Of a DNA stretch of 64,000 bases, positions 1 through 5,319 are shown one piece after another (the first letter of the stretch is position 1; every line of letters starts with the position of its first letter). The stretch covers positions 62,001-126,000 of the IMG/VR virus record IMGVR_UViG_3300017917_001123, one strand, 5' to 3'. The position numbers and the translations under genes are program-made. Under the pieces are notes generated by a model. That model ran no database searches. It had not been told where the DNA came from and saw only the letters and a program-made list of their open reading frames with translations.

Positions 1-433
1 GAGTGATTTAACTAAAGCCGCAAAAATAGCATTCGCAAGTGAATTTGCTTTTTACTTAAAAGCACAGAACTTCCATTGGAACGTCGAAGGTCCATTGTTC
101 CTTCAGTTCCACGATTTATTTGGTAAAATTTACGGCGAAGTTTATGATAGTATCGACGCATTCGCTGAGCAAATTCGTGCCTTAGGTTCTTATGCTCCTG
201 CGGCATTTAGCAAGCTCAGTATGCTAAGTCAAATAGACGATGAAGCAGATGTTTTGCCAGCAGACCAAATGCTTCAAGAACTTCTTGCTGATAATGAAAA
301 AATGATTAAAATCCTAAAAATGGTTTTTGATCTTTCTGAACAACAAGGTACAAACGGTTTTAGTGATTTCATCGCCGGACGCATGGATGCTCATGCTAAA
401 CACGGCTGGATGTTACGTTCTTCACTAAAATGA
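1..433 (+). CDS. dps: Dps/DNA-binding ferritin-like protein (5' end just outside the window)
   Basis: Frame is open from nt 2 (SDLTKAAKIAFASEFAFYLKAQNFHWNVEGP), upstream of the ORF-track start at 95. Dps motifs HWNVxG, FHxxF, D-x3-E (DAFAEQIRALG) and the C-terminal K-x2-WML are present. Confidence 0.9.
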   Translation, partial: SDLTKAAKIAFASEFAFYLKAQNFHWNVEGPLFLQFHDLFGKIYGEVYDSIDAFAEQIRALGSYAPAAFSKLSMLSQIDDEADVLPADQMLQELLADNEKMIKILKMVFDLSEQQGTNGFSDFIAGRMDAHAKHGWMLRSSLK

Positions 434-624
434 AAATCAACCAACTACTAGAAAATTTCGCCGATGGTAAAAAGCCAGGCCGCAAAGGCTTGGCAAAACG
501 TTCTGGAGTAAACTGTAAAGCATCAGTTTCAACTCTACGCAAGGTAGCTAAAAATAGCTCAGGCGAAAAACAACGTATGGCACACTGGTGTGCTAATATG
601 AAATCTGGTAAATCTAAAAAATAA
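430..624 (+). CDS. small basic protein, possibly an internal head protein
   Basis: ATGA overlap with dps; Lys/Arg-rich; N-terminal MKINQLLE resembles a prohead-protease-cleaved leader (L-x-E). Confidence 0.6.
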   Translation: MKINQLLENFADGKKPGRKGLAKRSGVNCKASVSTLRKVAKNSSGEKQRMAHWCANMKSGKSKK

Positions 625-731
625 GTGCGACCCCAATTTGCCCTGACGAATGCCAATTCGTTGATGCCGTACGAAGAAAAGTGGAAAATTCGTACATCTA
701 GGATCCTCGGAAGCCACTTTAACAGTCGCAC
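625..731 (+). ncRNA. candidate structured RNA with pseudoknot
   Basis: Pairings: 625-631/725-731, 645-651/656-662, 669-675/689-695, and a loop-tail pseudoknot 678-684/714-720. The G645-U662 pair favours the + strand. Confidence 0.5.
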
Positions 732-751
732 AAAATATTTAACATCAAGAC

Positions 752-781
752 TTGACTTTTATCTTAGCAGTAAAGTATAAT
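752..781 (+). promoter_or_regulatory. sigma70-type early promoter
   Basis: TTGACT-18 nt-TATAAT, followed by SD AGGAG and ATG 806. Confidence 0.75.
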
Positions 782-805
782 TAAACACATAGGAGAACAA
801 CACAC

Positions 806-1108
806 ATGAGCAAAATTTTTGGCGCACCAGAACAAGCAAAAATTAAACAACTAATTTCAGAAGGCGTTACTGTACTTCAAGAGATCGAGGATCTTAATGA
901 AGGTCTCAACGATACTATTAAAGCAGTCGCAGAAGAGCTAGAAGTAAAACCGAGCATTATTAAAAAAGCAATTAAAATCGCACAAAAGGGCGACTGGGAA
1001 CGTGTATTCAATGAGTTCGATGATCTAGAAACTATTGTCGACATCAGCGGTCATGCTATTCGTCAAGACGACTACGATGCCCAAAACCCAAACCGTAGCG
1101 AGGACTAA
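806..1108 (+). CDS. dsDNA-binding protein, T4 DsbA/GapR-like
   Basis: Helical 100-aa protein with the pattern LISEG..LQEIEDLNEGLNDTIKAVAEELEVKPSIIKKAIK typical of phage DsbA-like proteins; good SD. Confidence 0.6.
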   Translation: MSKIFGAPEQAKIKQLISEGVTVLQEIEDLNEGLNDTIKAVAEELEVKPSIIKKAIKIAQKGDWERVFNEFDDLETIVDISGHAIRQDDYDAQNPNRSED

Positions 1109-1407
1109 TGGATCATATTAGTAATGTCATTGTTGACATTTATAAGTGGGCGGAGAGGGACTATCGCGAATGGCCTTTTAGGTTTGTTATCGAAGTCCTT
1201 GCCTGGGCTATTAGCATTGGCTGTAGTATTACTATGGCCTTTACTGTGCCTACTCCTCCTCTACTTATTCTATATCCCATCTGGATCTTAGGATGTGCGA
1301 TGTACGGTTGGGCCGCGTGGACTCGCGGTAGTTTTGGAATGGTAGCTAACTATATTCTGCTAACCACAATAGATACTATTGGGTTAGTGAACATGTTAGT
1401 TAAATAA
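1108..1407 (+). CDS. small 3-TM membrane protein
   Basis: TAATG overlap; three hydrophobic helices. Confidence 0.7.
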   Translation: MDHISNVIVDIYKWAERDYREWPFRFVIEVLAWAISIGCSITMAFTVPTPPLLILYPIWILGCAMYGWAAWTRGSFGMVANYILLTTIDTIGLVNMLVK

Positions 1408-1415
1408 TAACGAGA

Positions 1416-1474
1416 AAGGTTTAGCGAGCCATAAGTCGCTGTTTAGAAGGTTAGCCGGCCATAAGCGGTAGGAG
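1416..1474 (+). promoter_or_regulatory. tandem hairpin translational operator upstream of DNA polymerase
   Basis: Two ~30-nt repeats AAGGTT(T)AGC-NN-GCCATAAG-NN-G: hairpins 1423-1440 and 1454-1469 with an identical 8-nt loop, abutting SD AGGAG at 1470-1474. Confidence 0.7.
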
Positions 1475-1479
1475 AAAAA

Positions 1480-4149
1480 ATGAGTTACATCGATGCCATC
1501 TGGGATCGTGACAACGACGTTGTACGTGTCGCTGAACGTGATCCTAAAAAGGGTAGAATCTTCGTAGATTATCCAGCCCGTTATCAATTTTATTACCCCG
1601 ACAATAAAGGAAAGTACAAATCCATTTACGGGGAAAGTCTATCAAAAGTCACTTGTAAAACATTCAAAGACTTTATCAAAGAACAAAAAATCCACTCAAG
1701 TCACAAGCTATACGAAAGCGACATTAACGCTGTGTTTCGTGTGCTTGAAGAAAACTATCTAGGAAAAGATGCTCCGAAACTAAATGTAGCATTTTTCGAT
1801 ATTGAGGTGGACTTCGATCCAGAACGCGGTTACGCATCTCCAGACGATGCGTTCATGCCAATTACTGCGATTGCTGTTCACCTACAATGGTTAGATACAC
1901 TGGTCTGTCTTGCTATTCCTCCAAAGACACTTACAATGGAGCAGGCACAAGAGTTAGTTAAAGATTTTCCTAACACACATCTCTTTGAAAGCGAAGCAGA
2001 GATGCTCGACACTTTCTTAAAGCTAATCGAAGACGCAGATATTCTTAGCGGTTGGAACTCGGAAGGTTTCGATATTCCGTACACCGTTAACCGGGTTACT
2101 AAAGCCTTAAGCAAAGAAGACACACGCAGATTCTGTTTGTTTAATCAATTTCCAAAGAAACGTGAGTACGAAAAATATGGGAAACAAGCTGTTACCTATG
2201 ATCTTGTTGGTCGTGTTCATTTGGACAGTCTCGAGCTGTACCGCAAATACACATACGAAGAACGACACACATATCGACTGGATGCTATTGGAGAGATGGA
2301 AGTAGGCGAAACTAAAACAGTCTACGAAGGCACACTTGACCAACTATACAACAATGACTTTAAAAAGTTTATTGAATATAACAGACAAGACTGTGCGCTA
2401 CTCGATAAACTAGATAAGAAACTAAAATTCATTGACCTAGCAAACGCTATTGCTCATGAAAACACAGTTCTGCTACAAACTACAATGGGTGCTGTAGCAG
2501 TTACTGAACAGGCTATTATCAACGAGGCACATCACCGTGGTATGATTGTTCCAAGTCGTACACGCAAAGACGAGCTTGGCGATACACAGGCCGCAGGTGC
2601 TTATGTTGCTTATCCAAAGAAAGGTCTTCATGACTGGATTGGATCTGTTGATATTAACTCTCTTTATCCGTCTGCGATTCGTGCCTTAAACATGGGACCA
2701 GAGACTATTGTTGGGCAGTTACGTCAAGATTACACCCAAGCAGAAATCGAAGCAAAAATGGCAAAAGGTAATTCTTTTGCGGCGGCTTGGGAAGGCAAAT
2801 TCGGTTCAAACGAATATGAGTTTGTTATGTCGCAAGACAAAGCCAACGACATTGTTGTCGAATGGGAAACTGGCGAAGAAGACATCTTGTCCGGTGCTCA
2901 GATCTATGACTTAATCTTTAATAGTAATCAACCATGGATGCTTTCAGCCAATGGTACAATCTTTACTTACGAAACAGAAGGTATTATTCCAGGCTTGCTC
3001 AAGCGTTGGTATGCTGAACGTAAGGACATGCAGAAAAAACTCAAAGAAGCAATTGACGCAGGTAATAAGATTGAAGAGGAATACTGGGACAAACGTCAGT
3101 TAGTTAAGAAGATTAACTTGAACAGTTTGTACGGTGCTATTCTTAACGCTGGTTGTAGATTCTTCGATAAAAGAATTGGGCAGTCTACTACGCTAGTAGG
3201 TCGTCAAATCTCCAAACACATGGCAAGTAAAATCAACGAAATTATTACAGGCGAATATGATTATCGTGGACGCTCTGTAATTTATGGAGATACTGACTCG
3301 TGTTACTTCTCTGCTTACAGTACACTAAAGAACGATATTGACAAAGGACGTTTGCCTTGGGATAAAGACGTTGCCATCCAACTGTACAACCAGATTGCTG
3401 ATGAAGTAAACGGCACATTCCCACAGTTTATGTTGGATGCGTTCCACTGTCCAAAGAGTCGCGGTGAAGTTATCAAAGCAGGTCGCGAAATTGTTGCGTC
3501 TAAAGGTTTGTTTATTACTAAGAAACGTTATGCTGTTCTTTATTACGATAAAGACGGAAAACGCTACGACACAGATGATAAGCCAGGCAAGATCAAGGCT
3601 ATGGGTCTAGACCTTAAGCGTTCAGATACTCCAGAATTTATGCAGAAGTTCTTGGAAGAAATCTTAACACGAGTCCTAAACGGCGCAGAAGAGCAAGAAG
3701 TGTTAGATCGTATTAGCGAATTCCGCACAGAGTTTAAAGCTCGCCCAGGCTGGGAAAAGGGTTCGCCTAAACGTGCTAACAACATTACAGAGTATGCGGC
3801 TAAGGAAAAGAAACAGGGCAAGGCTAATATGCCAGGTCACGTTCGAGCAAGCCTTAATTGGAATACTCTAAAACAACTTAACGGAGACAAATACTCAATG
3901 GGTATTGTTGACGGTATGAAAGTAATTGTTTGTAAGTTAAAAGATAATCCACTAGGTTATACCTCAGTCGCTTATCCGGTAGACGAACTAAGATTGCCTA
4001 AATGGTTCCAGGAATTACCTTTTGATCATGGCGAGATGGAAGCTACAATCATTAATAATAAACTGGAAAACCTAATCGGTGTGTTGGAATGGGACTTAGA
4101 CTCTACAACACAAAATAATACCTTTGGTAATTTGTTCACATTTGAATAA
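1480..4149 (+). CDS. gp43: family B DNA polymerase (T4 gp43-like)
   Basis: Exonuclease motifs FDIEV, GWNSEGFDIPY, YNRQD; polymerase motifs DINSLYPS, KKINLNSLYG, YGDTDS, KKRY. Confidence 0.97.
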   Translation: MSYIDAIWDRDNDVVRVAERDPKKGRIFVDYPARYQFYYPDNKGKYKSIYGESLSKVTCKTFKDFIKEQKIHSSHKLYESDINAVFRVLEENYLGKDAPKLNVAFFDIEVDFDPERGYASPDDAFMPITAIAVHLQWLDTLVCLAIPPKTLTMEQAQELVKDFPNTHLFESEAEMLDTFLKLIEDADILSGWNSEGFDIPYTVNRVTKALSKEDTRRFCLFNQFPKKREYEKYGKQAVTYDLVGRVHLDSLELYRKYTYEERHTYRLDAIGEMEVGETKTVYEGTLDQLYNNDFKKFIEYNRQDCALLDKLDKKLKFIDLANAIAHENTVLLQTTMGAVAVTEQAIINEAHHRGMIVPSRTRKDELGDTQAAGAYVAYPKKGLHDWIGSVDINSLYPSAIRALNMGPETIVGQLRQDYTQAEIEAKMAKGNSFAAAWEGKFGSNEYEFVMSQDKANDIVVEWETGEEDILSGAQIYDLIFNSNQPWMLSANGTIFTYETEGIIPGLLKRWYAERKDMQKKLKEAIDAGNKIEEEYWDKRQLVKKINLNSLYGAILNAGCRFFDKRIGQSTTLVGRQISKHMASKINEIITGEYDYRGRSVIYGDTDSCYFSAYSTLKNDIDKGRLPWDKDVAIQLYNQIADEVNGTFPQFMLDAFHCPKSRGEVIKAGREIVASKGLFITKKRYAVLYYDKDGKRYDTDDKPGKIKAMGLDLKRSDTPEFMQKFLEEILTRVLNGAEEQEVLDRISEFRTEFKARPGWEKGSPKRANNITEYAAKEKKQGKANMPGHVRASLNWNTLKQLNGDKYSMGIVDGMKVIVCKLKDNPLGYTSVAYPVDELRLPKWFQELPFDHGEMEATIINNKLENLIGVLEWDLDSTTQNNTFGNLFTFE

Positions 4150-4154
4150 TTTTG

Positions 4155-4183
4155 TTGACATTGACCAATTTTCTAAATATAAT
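4155..4183 (+). promoter_or_regulatory. consensus sigma70 promoter with overlapping TAAATA late box
   Basis: TTGACA(4155-60)-17 nt-TATAAT(4178-83); TAAATA at 4174-79; SD AGGAG downstream. Confidence 0.8.
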
Positions 4184-4207
4184 GTAACATACAGGAGAAT
4201 AATAAAA

Positions 4208-4942
4208 ATGAAAGACATCCTTCAAGATATCGTAAGTCATACACATAATCTAGGCTTCCTTAACATTGTTAAGATCACAGGCGCAGAAGACAAAACAGTT
4301 ATTGACTCAATGGCAGACGACCGCTCTGTAATTCTACAAGCAGAAACTGCTAATCCGTATCCAGACATGATTGGCGTGTTTGGTATGCCACAACTTAACA
4401 AACTAAAGATTCATCTAGATTGTCCCGAATATAAAGAGGACGCAAAGATCGATGTTGTTAAAGCAGATCGAAACGGTGTTACTCTTCCGGTAGGCCTTCA
4501 CTTTGAAAATAAGAAAGGCGACTTCAAGAACGACTATCGCTTTATGAACACAGAAATTATCAACGAAAAGTTGAAGACTGTTAAGTTCAAAGGTGTCAAT
4601 TGGGATGTTGAGATTGTTCCTAGCGTTGCCGCAGTTCAGCGTTTTAACTTCCAAGCAAGTGCTAACTCCGAACATACTACATTTATTGCCAAGACCGACG
4701 GCGATAAGCTAAAGTTCTATTTTGGTGACGCAAGTACACACGCAGGTGAGTTTGTTTTTGCTGAAGGCATTACAGGTAAGATTACAACTAACCTAGCATG
4801 GCCTGTTTCACAAGTTCTAGCAATTCTAAAGATTGCTGATGTAAACAATACTAAGATGAGCTTTAGTAACGCAGGTGCTCTTCAAATTGAGTTAGACAGT
4901 GGTCTAGCAAAATACAAGTACATTGTTCCAGCACAAGCATGA
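4208..4942 (+). CDS. putative sliding clamp (gp45-like)
   Basis: 244 aa from ATG 4208 (SD AGGAG), with a two-repeat alpha/beta pattern and clamp-like size, immediately after the polymerase (which ends in a clamp-binding-like NLFTFE). The ORF-track start at 4124 runs through the promoter. Confidence 0.6.
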   Translation: MKDILQDIVSHTHNLGFLNIVKITGAEDKTVIDSMADDRSVILQAETANPYPDMIGVFGMPQLNKLKIHLDCPEYKEDAKIDVVKADRNGVTLPVGLHFENKKGDFKNDYRFMNTEIINEKLKTVKFKGVNWDVEIVPSVAAVQRFNFQASANSEHTTFIAKTDGDKLKFYFGDASTHAGEFVFAEGITGKITTNLAWPVSQVLAILKIADVNNTKMSFSNAGALQIELDSGLAKYKYIVPAQA

Positions 4943-5319
4943 TAAAAGGCATTACACAATCAGGCAGATATACTGTGGTTAGTGGCGGTACTGCCTCTAA
5001 CCCGTATATTAGCCCAGGAGCAACTGGAGCAGGAATGGTTCGTTGGAATCCCAACATGAGCCAATTAGAAGTAAACGACGGCAATAATTGGCAGTCAATT
5101 GCAATGAGCTTTGCTAGCGTTGGATTAACTTCAGAAGCAGAGAGCATTTTAGATTGGGCAAGAAATAAAATGCGTGAAGAATTTGAAATGAAGGCTCTTG
5201 CCGAACAACATCCTGCTGTCAAGATTGCTCTAGAAAACCTAAATAAAGCACAAGAACAACTTAAGGCAACAGTAATATTAAGCAAGGATTATCAATCGAA
5301 TGAAGAAACCACCACTTAA
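4939..5319 (+). CDS. hypothetical protein
   Basis: ATGA coupling; 126-aa ORF. Confidence 0.7.
   Translation: MIKGITQSGRYTVVSGGTASNPYISPGATGAGMVRWNPNMSQLEVNDGNNWQSIAMSFASVGLTSEAESILDWARNKMREEFEMKALAEQHPAVKIALENLNKAQEQLKATVILSKDYQSNEETTT

What the first reader, a model, noticed from the sequence alone, without database searches (positions are those of the whole stretch)
1416..1474. Duplicated 8-nt-loop hairpin with compensatory stem changes against the DNA polymerase RBS
Seen: two ~30-nt-periodic copies, AGCGA-GCCATAAG-TCGCT (1423-1440) and GCCG-GCCATAAG-CGGT (1454-1469), each preceded by AAGGTT. Loops are identical while the stems covary (GA/TC vs CG/CG), and the second copy touches SD AGGAG. 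Established: T4 gp43 represses its own translation through a single 5-bp-stem, 8-nt-loop hairpin just 5' of its SD. Inference: a tandem autogenous operator with a different loop sequence, possibly cooperative; the loop GCC could also pair with the upstream GGU. A tandem ligand-binding aptamer is an alternative.
Basis: partly seen in the sequence, partly recalled or inferred. Interest (0 to 1): 0.68.

Follow-up and report, generated by a model that had tools for sequence, protein, structure and literature searches.

The report
Tandem mini-pseudoknot leader of phage polB
Just upstream of the DNA polymerase gene of an uncultivated jumbo phage lie two tiny, strongly conserved RNA pseudoknots, the second touching the ribosome binding site; they form a previously uncatalogued control element that most likely throttles synthesis of the polymerase.

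Summary
Window 1418-1469 holds two hairpins with 8-nt loops (GCCAUAAG). The second ends one base before the SD AGGAG of an 889-aa family-B DNA polymerase.

- **Conservation:** all 72 distinct leaders from relatives with 80-90% identical polymerases keep both hairpins. Cells paired are 94.8%, against 22-43% when partners are slid, and 10 of 13 pairs show double changes.
- **Pseudoknot:** The GGU upstream of each hairpin covaries with loop bases 1-3 without exception (148 GCC with GGU/GGC; 17 GCU with AGU; 3 ACC with GGU). Each unit is therefore a 21-23-nt H-type pseudoknot.
- **Specificity:** the motif occurs only in the polB leader, in the 64-kb window and in about 1 Mb of related loci. It matches no Rfam family.
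- **Distribution:** the tandem form marks one clade. Sister clades keep only the SD-proximal unit behind a different hairpin, or have no leader. Cultured relatives lack it.
- **Stability:** hairpin stability is held near -5 kcal/mol.

Best reading: a translational operator, probably autogenous as for T4 gp43, but not homologous to that operator. Binding is untested. A riboswitch is not excluded.

The parts
1401..1406 (+). TAAATA, a possible promoter -10-like element for a polB-proximal transcript (inferred)
   Evidence: TAAATA, TATAAATA or TATAAT is kept 3-25 nt before the conserved GAG that opens the leader, whatever the upstream gene. In the window, 9 of 26 TAAATA copies lie in the 3.7% of intergenic DNA. 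No transcript data are available.
1418..1420 (+). GGU, the 5' strand of pseudoknot helix 1; it pairs with 1428-1430
   Evidence: On alignment A1 the pairs are: cols 18/30 GC 62, AU 5; cols 19/29 GC 70; cols 20/28 UG 56, CG 9, UA 3. The remaining cells are misaligned rows that still carry GGU or GGC.
1423..1440 (+). Hairpin 1: stem 1423-1427/1436-1440; loop 1428-1435. Loop bases 1428-1430 (GCC) are the 3' strand of pseudoknot 1, and 1431-1435 (AUAAG) are the A-rich crossing loop.
   Evidence: All 5 stem pairs show double compensatory changes in 72 leaders. RNAalifold predicts the stem independently. Loop positions 2, 4, 6 and 7 are invariant.
1449..1451 (+). GGU, the 5' strand of pseudoknot helix 2; it pairs with 1458-1460
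   Evidence: Every SD-proximal unit with a GCC loop has GGU or GGC in the 11 nt upstream. Every unit with a GCU loop has AGU instead. The GCC/GCU state of the SD-proximal unit changes at least 3 times on the polymerase tree.
1454..1469 (+). Hairpin 2: stem 1454-1457/1466-1469; loop 1458-1465 (GCC plus AUAAG)
   Evidence: Four of 5 stem pairs show double changes, with G.U in 30 of 72 at the closing pair, which points to sense-strand RNA. The stem alternates between 4 bp GC-rich and 6-7 bp AU-rich at least 11 times on the tree with unchanged free energy.
1470..1474 (+). Shine-Dalgarno AGGAG, directly after hairpin 2
   Evidence: AGGAG follows the stem in 55 of 70 tandem leaders. In 31 of 70, 1-2 SD bases lie inside the maximal stem. 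In the 60-66% identity clade, the GG of GGAG is the 3' arm itself.
1480..4149 (+). polB, the family-B DNA polymerase gene (889 aa) that the leader precedes
   Evidence: Pfam DNA_pol_B 4e-38 and DNA_pol_B_exo1 5e-19. It is 51% identical to the Sinorhizobium jumbo phage Phosso polymerase and 26% identical to T4 gp43.

Best explanation
The 1418-1474 segment is a cis-acting translational control element in the polB mRNA.

**Structure (shown by comparison)**
- It consists of two compact H-type pseudoknots about 30 nt apart.
- In each, a 3-bp helix (upstream GGU with loop GCC) stacks on a 4-7-bp hairpin stem.
- A 5-nt A-rich stretch (A-Y-A-A-R) crosses the short helix.
- The 3' unit ends at, or overlaps, the Shine-Dalgarno sequence. 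It lies at -31 to -11 from the AUG.

**Mechanism (inferred)**
- That position is expected, from general knowledge, to fall within the region a 30S subunit occupies, so the unit would have to open, or be accommodated, for initiation.
- Its stability is held at a marginal level, so a bound factor could decide whether it stays shut.
- The factor is most likely the phage DNA polymerase itself when it is not engaged on DNA. That would be autogenous repression, as in T4 and RB69 gp43.
- The 5' unit would add a second, regularly spaced binding site or stabilise the mRNA 5' end.
For: **Structure**
- Cells paired are 94.8%, against 22-43% when partners are slid. Ten of 13 pairs show double changes in 72 leaders. 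RNAalifold finds the same stems.
- The same holds in 27 more distant leaders.
- The pseudoknot has no exception in 168 units. Fisher p is 2e-23, ignoring relatedness. Switches recur 3-4 times on the polymerase tree for each unit.
- G.U pairs place the structure on the sense strand.

**Link to polB**
- The covariance model finds only 1405-1484 in the window (78 bits; next best 12.6).
- There are no other copies in about 600 kb of L001-L080.
- Four architectures (five loci: L220, L224, L241, L243/L245) have an ORF inserted between leader and polB. In each, the ORF's stop overlaps the polB start as ATGA, which would allow translational coupling.

**Link to the ribosome binding site**
- The stem ends 9-13 nt before the AUG and the SD follows at once or overlaps.

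**Tuned stability**
- Hairpin free energy is -4.8 +/- 1.2 kcal/mol.
- Short GC-rich and long AU-rich stems give the same energy (-5.2 and -4.9).
- The loop-to-loop period is 29-30 nt in 61 of 70 leaders.

**Precedent**
- T4 gp43 represses its own mRNA through an 8-nt-loop hairpin next to its SD.
- The 3' half of the loop here, (U/C)AA(A/G), resembles T4 UAAC, RB49 UAAA and the SELEX variant CAAC.
Against: - No binding or expression data exist, and RNA-protein docking is not available here.
- Every conserved base can be explained by the pseudoknot fold alone, so no base demands a protein partner.
- The T4 operator is reported to have no pseudoknot, and some T4-like polymerases do not autoregulate.
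- The leader has been lost or is absent in many close relatives. Presence or absence needs at least 11 changes on the tree. Whatever it does is therefore dispensable.
- The window sequence alone does not fold better than shuffles (z = +0.49).
- The loop resemblance to T4 covers 4 nt and could be chance.
Confidence: 0.45

Rival explanations
1. The element works without any factor. The marginally stable pseudoknots simply damp initiation from a strong SD (AGGAG), protect the 5' end of a promoter-proximal transcript from decay, or both. They would set a fixed low polymerase output or respond to temperature or Mg2+.
For: - All conserved bases are accounted for by the fold itself.
- Stability is held in a narrow band whatever the stem type.
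- A promoter-like TAAATA, TATAAATA or TATAAT lies just upstream, so unit 1, or the alternative hairpin in relatives, would sit at the 5' end of the mRNA.
- Relatives without a leader have polB coupled to the upstream gene with little or no SD. This suggests that low, fixed output is acceptable.
Against: - A plain hairpin would give the same damping. The strict pseudoknot, the invariant AA and the fixed 29-30-nt period are more than simple occlusion needs.
- Exclusive use at polB is unexplained if the element is a general stabiliser.
Confidence: 0.2
2. It is an operator for another trans-acting phage protein rather than the polymerase. Candidates are a RegA-like translational repressor, the phage single-strand-binding protein, or the small conserved regulator-like protein encoded upstream (806-1108).
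For: - Two equally spaced, near-identical sites suit a dimer or cooperative binder.
- ORF 806-1108 matches phrog_639 'transcriptional regulator' weakly (5e-8).
- A small gene occupies the slot just upstream of polB in Phosso (annotated 'DNA binding protein'), in 121Q and in the Vibrio phage. This is an analogy of position only; homology to ORF 806-1108 was not tested.
- In T4 that slot holds the translational repressor regA.
Against: - A general repressor should have several targets, but only polB carries the motif in 64 kb.
- ORF 806-1108 has no similarity to T4 RegA or to any solved structure.
- Upstream reading frames ending in the same conserved ...TVGKTL tail occur in relatives with and without the leader. 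This was read from leader sequences; it was not a homology test against ORF 806-1108.
Confidence: 0.15
3. It is a tandem riboswitch. Each mini-pseudoknot would be an aptamer for a small molecule, for example a nucleotide or deoxynucleotide-related metabolite. Ligand binding would lock the 3' unit over the SD.
For: - The topology matches the smallest known translational riboswitches: an H-type pseudoknot, an A-rich crossing loop and SD involvement.
- The short helix is marginally stable and would benefit from a ligand.
- Aptamers are known to occur in tandem.
Against: - Each unit is only 21-23 nt.
- Only A6 and A7 (plus A4 in unit 1) are conserved and unpaired, and the spacer L1 is not conserved. 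That leaves little for a specific pocket.
- No Rfam riboswitch model matches, even at E up to 10.
- The motif is seen only at polB of one phage lineage and not in other gene contexts among the DNA examined.
- Sister clades replace unit 1 with an unrelated hairpin.
Confidence: 0.1
4. It is a DNA-level feature: two direct-repeat binding sites for a DNA-binding protein three helical turns apart. Alternatively, it is a chance duplication with no function.
For: The identical 8-mers lie 30 bp apart, and a promoter-like element is next to them.
Against: - A double-stranded DNA site needs no flanking inverted repeats.
- Here the stems covary at every position, and G.U pairs are frequent, which would be A-C mismatches on the other strand.
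- The upstream triplet covaries with the loop.
- Conservation across more than 100 distinct leaders rules out chance.
Confidence: 0.02

Closest known systems
Autogenous translational operator of T4 / RB69 / RB49 DNA polymerase (gp43)
   Same: - It lies in the leader of a family-B phage DNA polymerase gene.
- It is a hairpin with a short stem and an 8-nt loop just 5' of the SD. T4 reads AGCCU-AAUAACUC-GGGCU ... AAGGA ... AUG.
- The 3' half of the loop is similar: T4/RB69 UAAC and RB49 UAAA, against (U/C)AA(A/G) here.
- It is specific to the polymerase's own mRNA.
   Different: - Here each unit is a pseudoknot, whereas none is reported for gp43.
- There are two units rather than one.
- The loop's 5' half is GCC, committed to pairing.
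- The 3' unit touches the SD, whereas in T4 about 10 nt separate hairpin and SD.
- The polymerases are only 26% identical.
- The phages in between (121Q, Phosso, Vibrio 2.275.O) lack any such leader, so an independent origin is likely.
- Binding is untested.
preQ1-I riboswitch (Rfam RF00522), the smallest natural H-type pseudoknot aptamer
   Same: - It is a compact H-type pseudoknot with an A-rich loop in the groove of a short helix.
- It acts at the SD and sometimes occurs in tandem (from general knowledge).
   Different: - There is no match to the Rfam model.
- The short helix here is formed by a 5' tail, not a 3' tail.
- Units are 21-23 nt rather than about 34 nt.
- Far fewer conserved unpaired bases are present.
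- The gene context is a polymerase, not queuosine genes.
Pseudoknot operators of autoregulated nucleic-acid-binding proteins: T4 gene 32 leader, E. coli rpsO (S15)
   Same: A pseudoknot in the leader of the regulator's own mRNA is used to control initiation. A one-nucleotide loop 1 crossing a 6-7-bp stem 2, as in the AU-rich form here, is the geometry I recall for the T2/T4 gene 32 pseudoknot (from general knowledge, not checked here).
   Different: - The gene is different.
- The gene 32 pseudoknot lies far from the ribosome binding site and nucleates cooperative coating.
- The rpsO pseudoknot contains the SD and AUG.
- There is no sequence similarity.
Guanidine-II riboswitch (mini-ykkC): two hairpins with conserved loops before an SD
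   Same: Two small hairpins have covarying stems, near-identical conserved loops and a variable linker, placed directly 5' of a ribosome binding site (from general knowledge).
   Different: - The loops there are ACGR tetraloops that kiss each other.
- Here the loops are 8 nt, and each pairs with its own upstream triplet.
- No Rfam match was found.

Membership tests
T4-type gp43 translational operator | Lies in the 5' leader of the phage family-B DNA polymerase gene, with the hairpin just upstream of the SD | tested here: met
   Hairpin 2 ends at 1469, the SD is at 1470-1474 and the ATG at 1480. The gene is a family-B polymerase.
T4-type gp43 translational operator | Single hairpin, about 5-bp stem and 8-nt loop, with loop core UAAC (T4, RB69) or UAAA (RB49) | tested here: inconclusive
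   The loops are 8 nt and the stems 4-7 bp. The loop is GCC-N-Y-A-A-R. Its last four bases, UAAA/UAAG/CAAA, resemble UAAC/UAAA, but the rest differs, and there are two units.
T4-type gp43 translational operator | Plain hairpin plus 3' single strand; no pseudoknot | tested here: not met
   Loop bases 1-3 pair with an upstream triplet in 168 of 168 units. The review states there is no evidence of a pseudoknot in the gene 43 operator.
T4-type gp43 translational operator | Bound by its own polymerase, with translational repression | not testable with these tools
   This needs EMSA or filter binding, toeprinting and reporter assays.
T4-type gp43 translational operator | Continuity of descent with the T-even operators | tested here: not met
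   The polymerases are 26% identical. The leaders of Phosso, 121Q and Vibrio phage 2.275.O carry nothing similar. On the tree the motif is confined to a few sister clades.
Any Rfam 15 family (including preQ1-I/II/III, SAM-II/V, guanidine-II/III, fluoride) | Match to the family covariance model | tested here: not met
   cmscan at E up to 10 on window 1-5000 gives no hit in the leader. At E up to 5 on eight variant loci it gives no hit at all.
H-type RNA pseudoknot (structural class) | Two helices in which loop bases of a hairpin pair with a flanking strand, supported by covariation, with loop lengths that fit the geometry | tested here: met
   Helix 1 is 3 bp, seen as GGU/GCC, GGC/GCC, AGU/GCU and GGU/ACC. 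Helix 2 is 3-7 bp, L1 is 0-3 nt, L2 is 0 and L3 is 5 nt. No 3D or chemical probing was done.
Riboswitch (functional class) | Conserved ligand pocket; occurrence in several gene contexts or lineages; ligand-dependent folding | tested here: inconclusive
   There are few conserved unpaired bases and a single gene context. Ligand response is not testable here.

The most novel reading that the evidence does not exclude
The two units are the smallest natural aptamers yet seen (21-23 nt). Together they would form a tandem riboswitch that lets a jumbo phage set DNA polymerase synthesis according to a nucleotide-related metabolite. This would be a riboswitch class controlling a replicative polymerase.
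Probability: 0.1. Interest if true: 0.9.

Novelty: new variant of a known kind. Interest (0 to 1): 0.62.

Why it matters
- **Gap in the T4 work:** autogenous control of a DNA polymerase by its own mRNA is known experimentally only from T4, RB69 and RB49. No structure of such a complex exists.
- **What this offers:** a second, independent, sharply defined leader at polB. It is tiny, has unusually clean covariation, and occurs in a very large environmental phage lineage. That lineage has at least 8000 polymerase homologues at E <= 1e-50 and contigs of 330-380 kb.
- **If the polymerase binds it:** it gives a minimal RNA for asking how a replicative polymerase recognises a specific RNA. It would also show that this type of feedback arose more than once.
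- **If the polymerase does not bind it:** it is either a new small riboswitch or a model for tuned, factor-free control of the ribosome binding site.
- **As an evolutionary example:** the form of the structure is kept while its parts turn over. Stem type flips at least 11 times at constant stability, and one module is swapped between clades.

Tried and rejected
- **Single-sequence folding of 1400-1500:** the minimum-energy fold is not better than shuffles (z = +0.49) and does not show both hairpins. Thermodynamics alone would have missed the element.
- **megablast against cultured phages:** no close relative.
- **Pattern GCCATAAG...GCCATAAG across IMG/VR:** I checked the fetched loci L081-L198. 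Only L085, L103, L112, L141 and L174 are polB leaders; the other loci lack the tandem hairpin structure or the polB context and look like chance matches.
- **Other copies in the genome:** a regex-plus-stem scan gave 16 hits against 12.5 expected from shuffles. None of the extra hits had the upstream triplet and an SD. The covariance model gave nothing above 12.6 bits.
- **Cultured relatives (Phosso, Vibrio 2.275.O, 121Q):** no such leader.
- **The alternative upstream hairpin as a degenerate copy of the unit:** its loop could pair with the conserved AGU only in some members, so I rejected the idea as unsupported.
- **Conserved AUG after that hairpin as an upstream ORF:** rejected, because the position reads CA(U/A/G)G.
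- **ORF 806-1108 as a RegA analogue:** no similarity to T4 RegA and no PDB relative.
- **Literature:**
  - The primary paper on T4/RB69 operator determinants is not held.
  - A catalogue of about 8500 IMG/VR structured-RNA candidates does not mention polymerase in its text, and its tables are not held. I cannot say whether this motif is listed there.
- **Not attempted:** a column-by-column test of polymerase/leader co-evolution. About 10 independent contrasts against 890 columns give no statistical power.

Full report
**1. The observation**

- AAGGTT lies at 1416-1421 and at 1447-1452.
- Hairpin 1 is AGCGA/GCCATAAG/TCGCT at 1423-1440.
- Hairpin 2 is GCCG/GCCATAAG/CGGT at 1454-1469.
- AGGAG lies at 1470-1474 and the ATG at 1480.

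GCCATAAG occurs nowhere else in the 64 kb on either strand. The two copies are a 30-nt direct repeat.

**2. Context**

The ATG opens an 889-aa ORF (1480-4149) with Pfam DNA_pol_B and DNA_pol_B_exo1 domains.
- Its best cultured relatives are jumbo phages. Sinorhizobium phage Phosso is 51% identical. The 121Q/PBECO4/GAP32 group and Vibrio phage 2.275.O are about 44% identical.
- It is 26% identical to T4 gp43.
- No cultured phage is close at the DNA level.
- The environmental lineage is very large. At least 8000 proteins match at E <= 1e-50, the top 120 are all at least 84% identical, and they sit on contigs of up to 380 kb. The window's own protein comes from a contig of 331,570 bp.

**3. Both hairpins are conserved and covary**

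IMG/VR gave 80 loci with 80-90% identical polymerases. Every one carries two hairpins with 8-nt (rarely 9-nt) loops in the same place.

On a MAFFT alignment of 72 distinct leaders (A1), I counted the two stems plus the first pseudoknot helix.
- Cells paired are 94.8%, against 22-43% when the 3' partners are slid by 1-3 columns.
- Ten of 13 pairs show changes on both sides.
- The covariation score is 0.63 against 0.27 in shuffles, with 0 of 500 shuffles reaching it.

RNAalifold, given no structure, predicts the same two stems. All 8 predicted pairs show compensatory changes.

G.U pairs are frequent: 30 of 72 at the closing pair of hairpin 2, and 56 of 72 in the pseudoknot. The structure therefore belongs to the sense strand, that is, the polB mRNA.

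**4. Each unit is a pseudoknot**

I collected all hairpins with an 8/9-nt loop of form NNNNNAAN from 147 distinct leaders. I did not constrain the first three loop bases.
- All 148 units with loop GCC have GGU (126) or GGC (22) within the 11 nt upstream.
- All 17 units with loop GCU have AGU there, and none has GGU or GGC.
- All 3 units with loop ACC have GGU.
- There is no exception. AGU occurs in only 4 of the 148 GCC units. Fisher's test gives p = 2e-23, ignoring relatedness.

On a polymerase tree, the GCU state of unit 1 appears at 4 places, and the ACC state at 3. The GCC/GCU state of the SD-proximal unit changes at least 3 times.

The AGU variants also show that the triplet is not kept as an SD-like sequence.

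The geometry fits an H-type pseudoknot.
- Helix 1 is 3 bp.
- The spacer is 0-3 nt.
- Helix 2 is 3-7 bp.
- No base lies between helix 2 and the loop strand of helix 1.
- A 5-nt A-rich crossing loop follows.

Loop positions 6 and 7 are invariant A in both units, and position 4 is invariant A in unit 1.

In the window:
- Unit 1 spans 1418-1440. Its pseudoknot pairs are G1418-C1430, G1419-C1429 and U1420.G1428.
- Unit 2 spans 1449-1469. Its pseudoknot pairs are G1449-C1460, G1450-C1459 and U1451.G1458.

**5. The motif belongs to polB only**

- A loop-plus-stem scan of the window gave hits at chance level (16 against 12.5 expected). None of the extra hits had the triplet and an SD.
- A covariance model built from A1, run without filters, finds 1405-1484 at 78.4 bits. 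Nothing else exceeds 12.6 bits.
- In about 600 kb of L001-L080 there are no further copies.
- Among the fetched loci L081-L198, which share only the two 8-mers, only the five polB leaders have the structure.

The model also picked up leaders that are not directly against polB.
- In L241 and L243/L245, a 50-57-aa Cys-rich ORF lies between leader and polB.
- In L220, the inserted ORF is a 206-aa 2OG-Fe(II)-oxygenase-like protein.
- In L224, it is a 232-aa ORF of unknown function.
- In each of these four architectures (five loci), the inserted ORF's stop overlaps the polB start as ATGA. Control of the first cistron could therefore still pass to polB by coupling. Because polB starts ATGAGT, the prior chance of this frame is about one in three per insertion. 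The pattern is suggestive, not proof.
- In L275, the leader and seven polB codons are followed by an insertion of about 820 nt carrying a reverse-strand endonuclease-like ORF. polB then resumes.

**6. Distribution**

A second scan, seeded with an alignment headed by the Phosso polymerase, gave 80 loci whose polymerases are 38-70% identical to the window's. I built a FastTree of 152 polymerases.
- The tandem form is one clade of 75 rows with support of 100. It includes L063, which my parser mislabelled because of a 9-nt loop.
- The sister clades carry a single SD-proximal unit of the same design. In some of these, the GG of the SD GGAG is itself the 3' arm.
- In the sister clades the unit is preceded by a different covarying hairpin with conserved flanks, (A/C)GAGUC-stem-loop-stem-A(U/A)G. 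On alignment A3 that hairpin is 100% paired and the unit stem 90%.
- Other members have no leader at all, and polB overlaps or abuts the upstream gene.
- Presence or absence needs at least 11 changes on the tree.
- Phosso, 121Q and Vibrio phage 2.275.O have nothing similar.

The tandem form is therefore a derived state in which a second unit replaced the older 5' hairpin.

**7. Relation to the ribosome binding site, and stability**

- In 70 tandem leaders, the stem of unit 2 ends 9-13 nt before the AUG in 64.
- AGGAG follows directly in 55.
- In 31, one or two SD bases lie inside the maximal stem.
- Hairpin free energies are narrow: unit 2 is -4.8 +/- 1.2 kcal/mol and unit 1 is -4.25 +/- 1.15.
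- The stem of unit 2 is either 4 bp and GC-rich or 6-7 bp and AU-rich. These two forms interchange at least 11 times on the tree, with the same energy (-5.2 against -4.9).
- The loop-to-loop period is 29-30 nt in 61 of 70 leaders.

Selection thus acts on shape, spacing and a marginal stability, not on stem sequence. That fits a structure which must be able to open.

**8. Transcription**

- A strong sigma-70-like promoter (TTGACT-18-TATAAT, 752-781) precedes ORF 806-1108, so polB may be read from a polycistronic transcript.
- In addition, TAAATA (window 1401-1406) lies 3-25 nt before the conserved GAG that opens the leader; in relatives this is TATAAATA or TATAAT. It is kept whatever the upstream gene.
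- In the window, TAAATA is concentrated in intergenic DNA.
- A polB-proximal start that puts unit 1 near the 5' end is therefore plausible, but it is inferred.

**9. Comparison with what is known**

- No Rfam 15 family matches the leader or its variants.
- The T4 gene 43 leader, read from NC_000866, is AGCCU-AAUAACUC-GGGCU followed by AUAAACUAAGGAAUAUCUAUG.
- According to the T4 review (PMC3014915):
  - The operator is a hairpin plus the ribosome-binding-site region.
  - There is no evidence of a pseudoknot.
  - The loop core is UAAC in T4 and RB69, and UAAA in RB49.
  - The AC/AA loop bases matter for binding.
  - Some T4-like polymerases do not autoregulate.
- The present loops end in (U/C)AA(A/G). 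This resemblance is worth testing, but it is too short to weigh.
- The element works like the gp43 operator in position and gene. It fails the membership tests for structure (it is a pseudoknot, and tandem) and for descent.
- A large catalogue of IMG/VR structured-RNA candidates highlights leaders of gp20 and gp32 but does not mention polymerase in its text. Its tables are not available here.

**10. Mechanism**

Shown by comparison:
- two sense-strand pseudoknots;
- exclusive association with polB;
- contact with the SD;
- tuned stability;
- fixed spacing.

Inferred:
- Unit 2, at -31 to -11, lies where a 30S subunit is expected to sit (from general knowledge), so it would have to open or be accommodated for initiation.
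- Whether unit 2 stays folded decides the rate of initiation.
- A bound factor controls that, and the factor is the polymerase.

I put the autogenous operator at 0.45. The rivals are:
- a factor-free attenuator or stabiliser, 0.2;
- another phage protein, 0.15;
- a tandem riboswitch, 0.1;
- a DNA-level site or chance, 0.02.

**11. Limits**

- All evidence is comparative.
- The tree is FastTree only.
- Leaders from metagenomes may recombine, so counts of independent switches are approximate.
This was about 1 Mb of polB loci, plus the loci recovered by the pattern search and the 64-kb window.

Noticed in passing
window 625-733 (+): In the intergenic gap before ORF 806 lies a GC-richer segment of about 109 nt. 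It folds into a closed multibranch structure (closing helix GTGCGAC/GTCGCAC, -28.4 kcal/mol, z = -2.4). There is a sub-threshold Rfam hit to the Rhizobiales sRNA Atu_At1 on the minus strand (37.6 bits against a cut-off of 60). Copies 75-79% identical occur in L053 and L042. It is not a tRNA.
   Followed up: partly
window 752-781 (+): A near-consensus sigma-70-type promoter (TTGACT, 18 nt, TATAAT; 11 of 12 matches) lies ahead of ORF 806-1108. This suggests host-polymerase transcription of the ORF806-ORF1108-polB block.
   Followed up: no
window 806-1108 (+): A 100-aa protein (phrog_12534, with a weaker match to phrog_639 'transcriptional regulator') lies upstream of polB. Phosso, 121Q and the Vibrio phage also have a small gene just upstream of polB, though its homology to this ORF was not tested. 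It shows no similarity to T4 RegA or to any solved structure.
   Followed up: partly
window 95-433 (+): A ferritin/Dps-like ORF in a phage genome (Pfam Ferritin, E = 2e-11).
   Followed up: no
window-wide; e.g. 1401, 10561, 14598, 19301, 22567, 59365: TAAATA is concentrated in intergenic DNA: 9 of 26 copies lie in 3.7% of the sequence. It often sits 20-60 nt before a gene start. Relatives show TATAAATA, the T4 late-promoter consensus, before the polB leader.
   Followed up: partly
L259, L255, L260, L268, L273, L280 about 45-70 nt upstream of polB: In the 60-66% identity clade, a third small covarying hairpin sits directly after TATAAATA (for example TCTACTCAGTAGA, CTGTTTCAACAG, TTGCTTCGAACAGCAA). 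It precedes the GAGUC hairpin.
   Followed up: no
L275 668-1495: polB is interrupted after codon 7 (MSYVDAI) by an insertion of about 820 nt. The insertion carries a reverse-strand 247-aa endonuclease-like ORF (687-1430). The intact leader stays with the orphaned 5' stub.
   Followed up: partly
L220 884-1504; L224 806-1504; L241 1331-1504; L243 1352-1504: Unrelated ORFs are inserted between the leader and polB: a 2OG-Fe(II)-oxygenase-like protein, a 232-aa protein of unknown function, and 50-57-aa Cys-rich proteins. Each ends in an ATGA overlap with the polB start.
   Followed up: partly
L254 about 1440-1503: This leader keeps the GAGUC hairpin but has lost the pseudoknot unit. The hairpin is followed directly by UGGAG and the start codon. 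It is a natural deletion variant.
   Followed up: no
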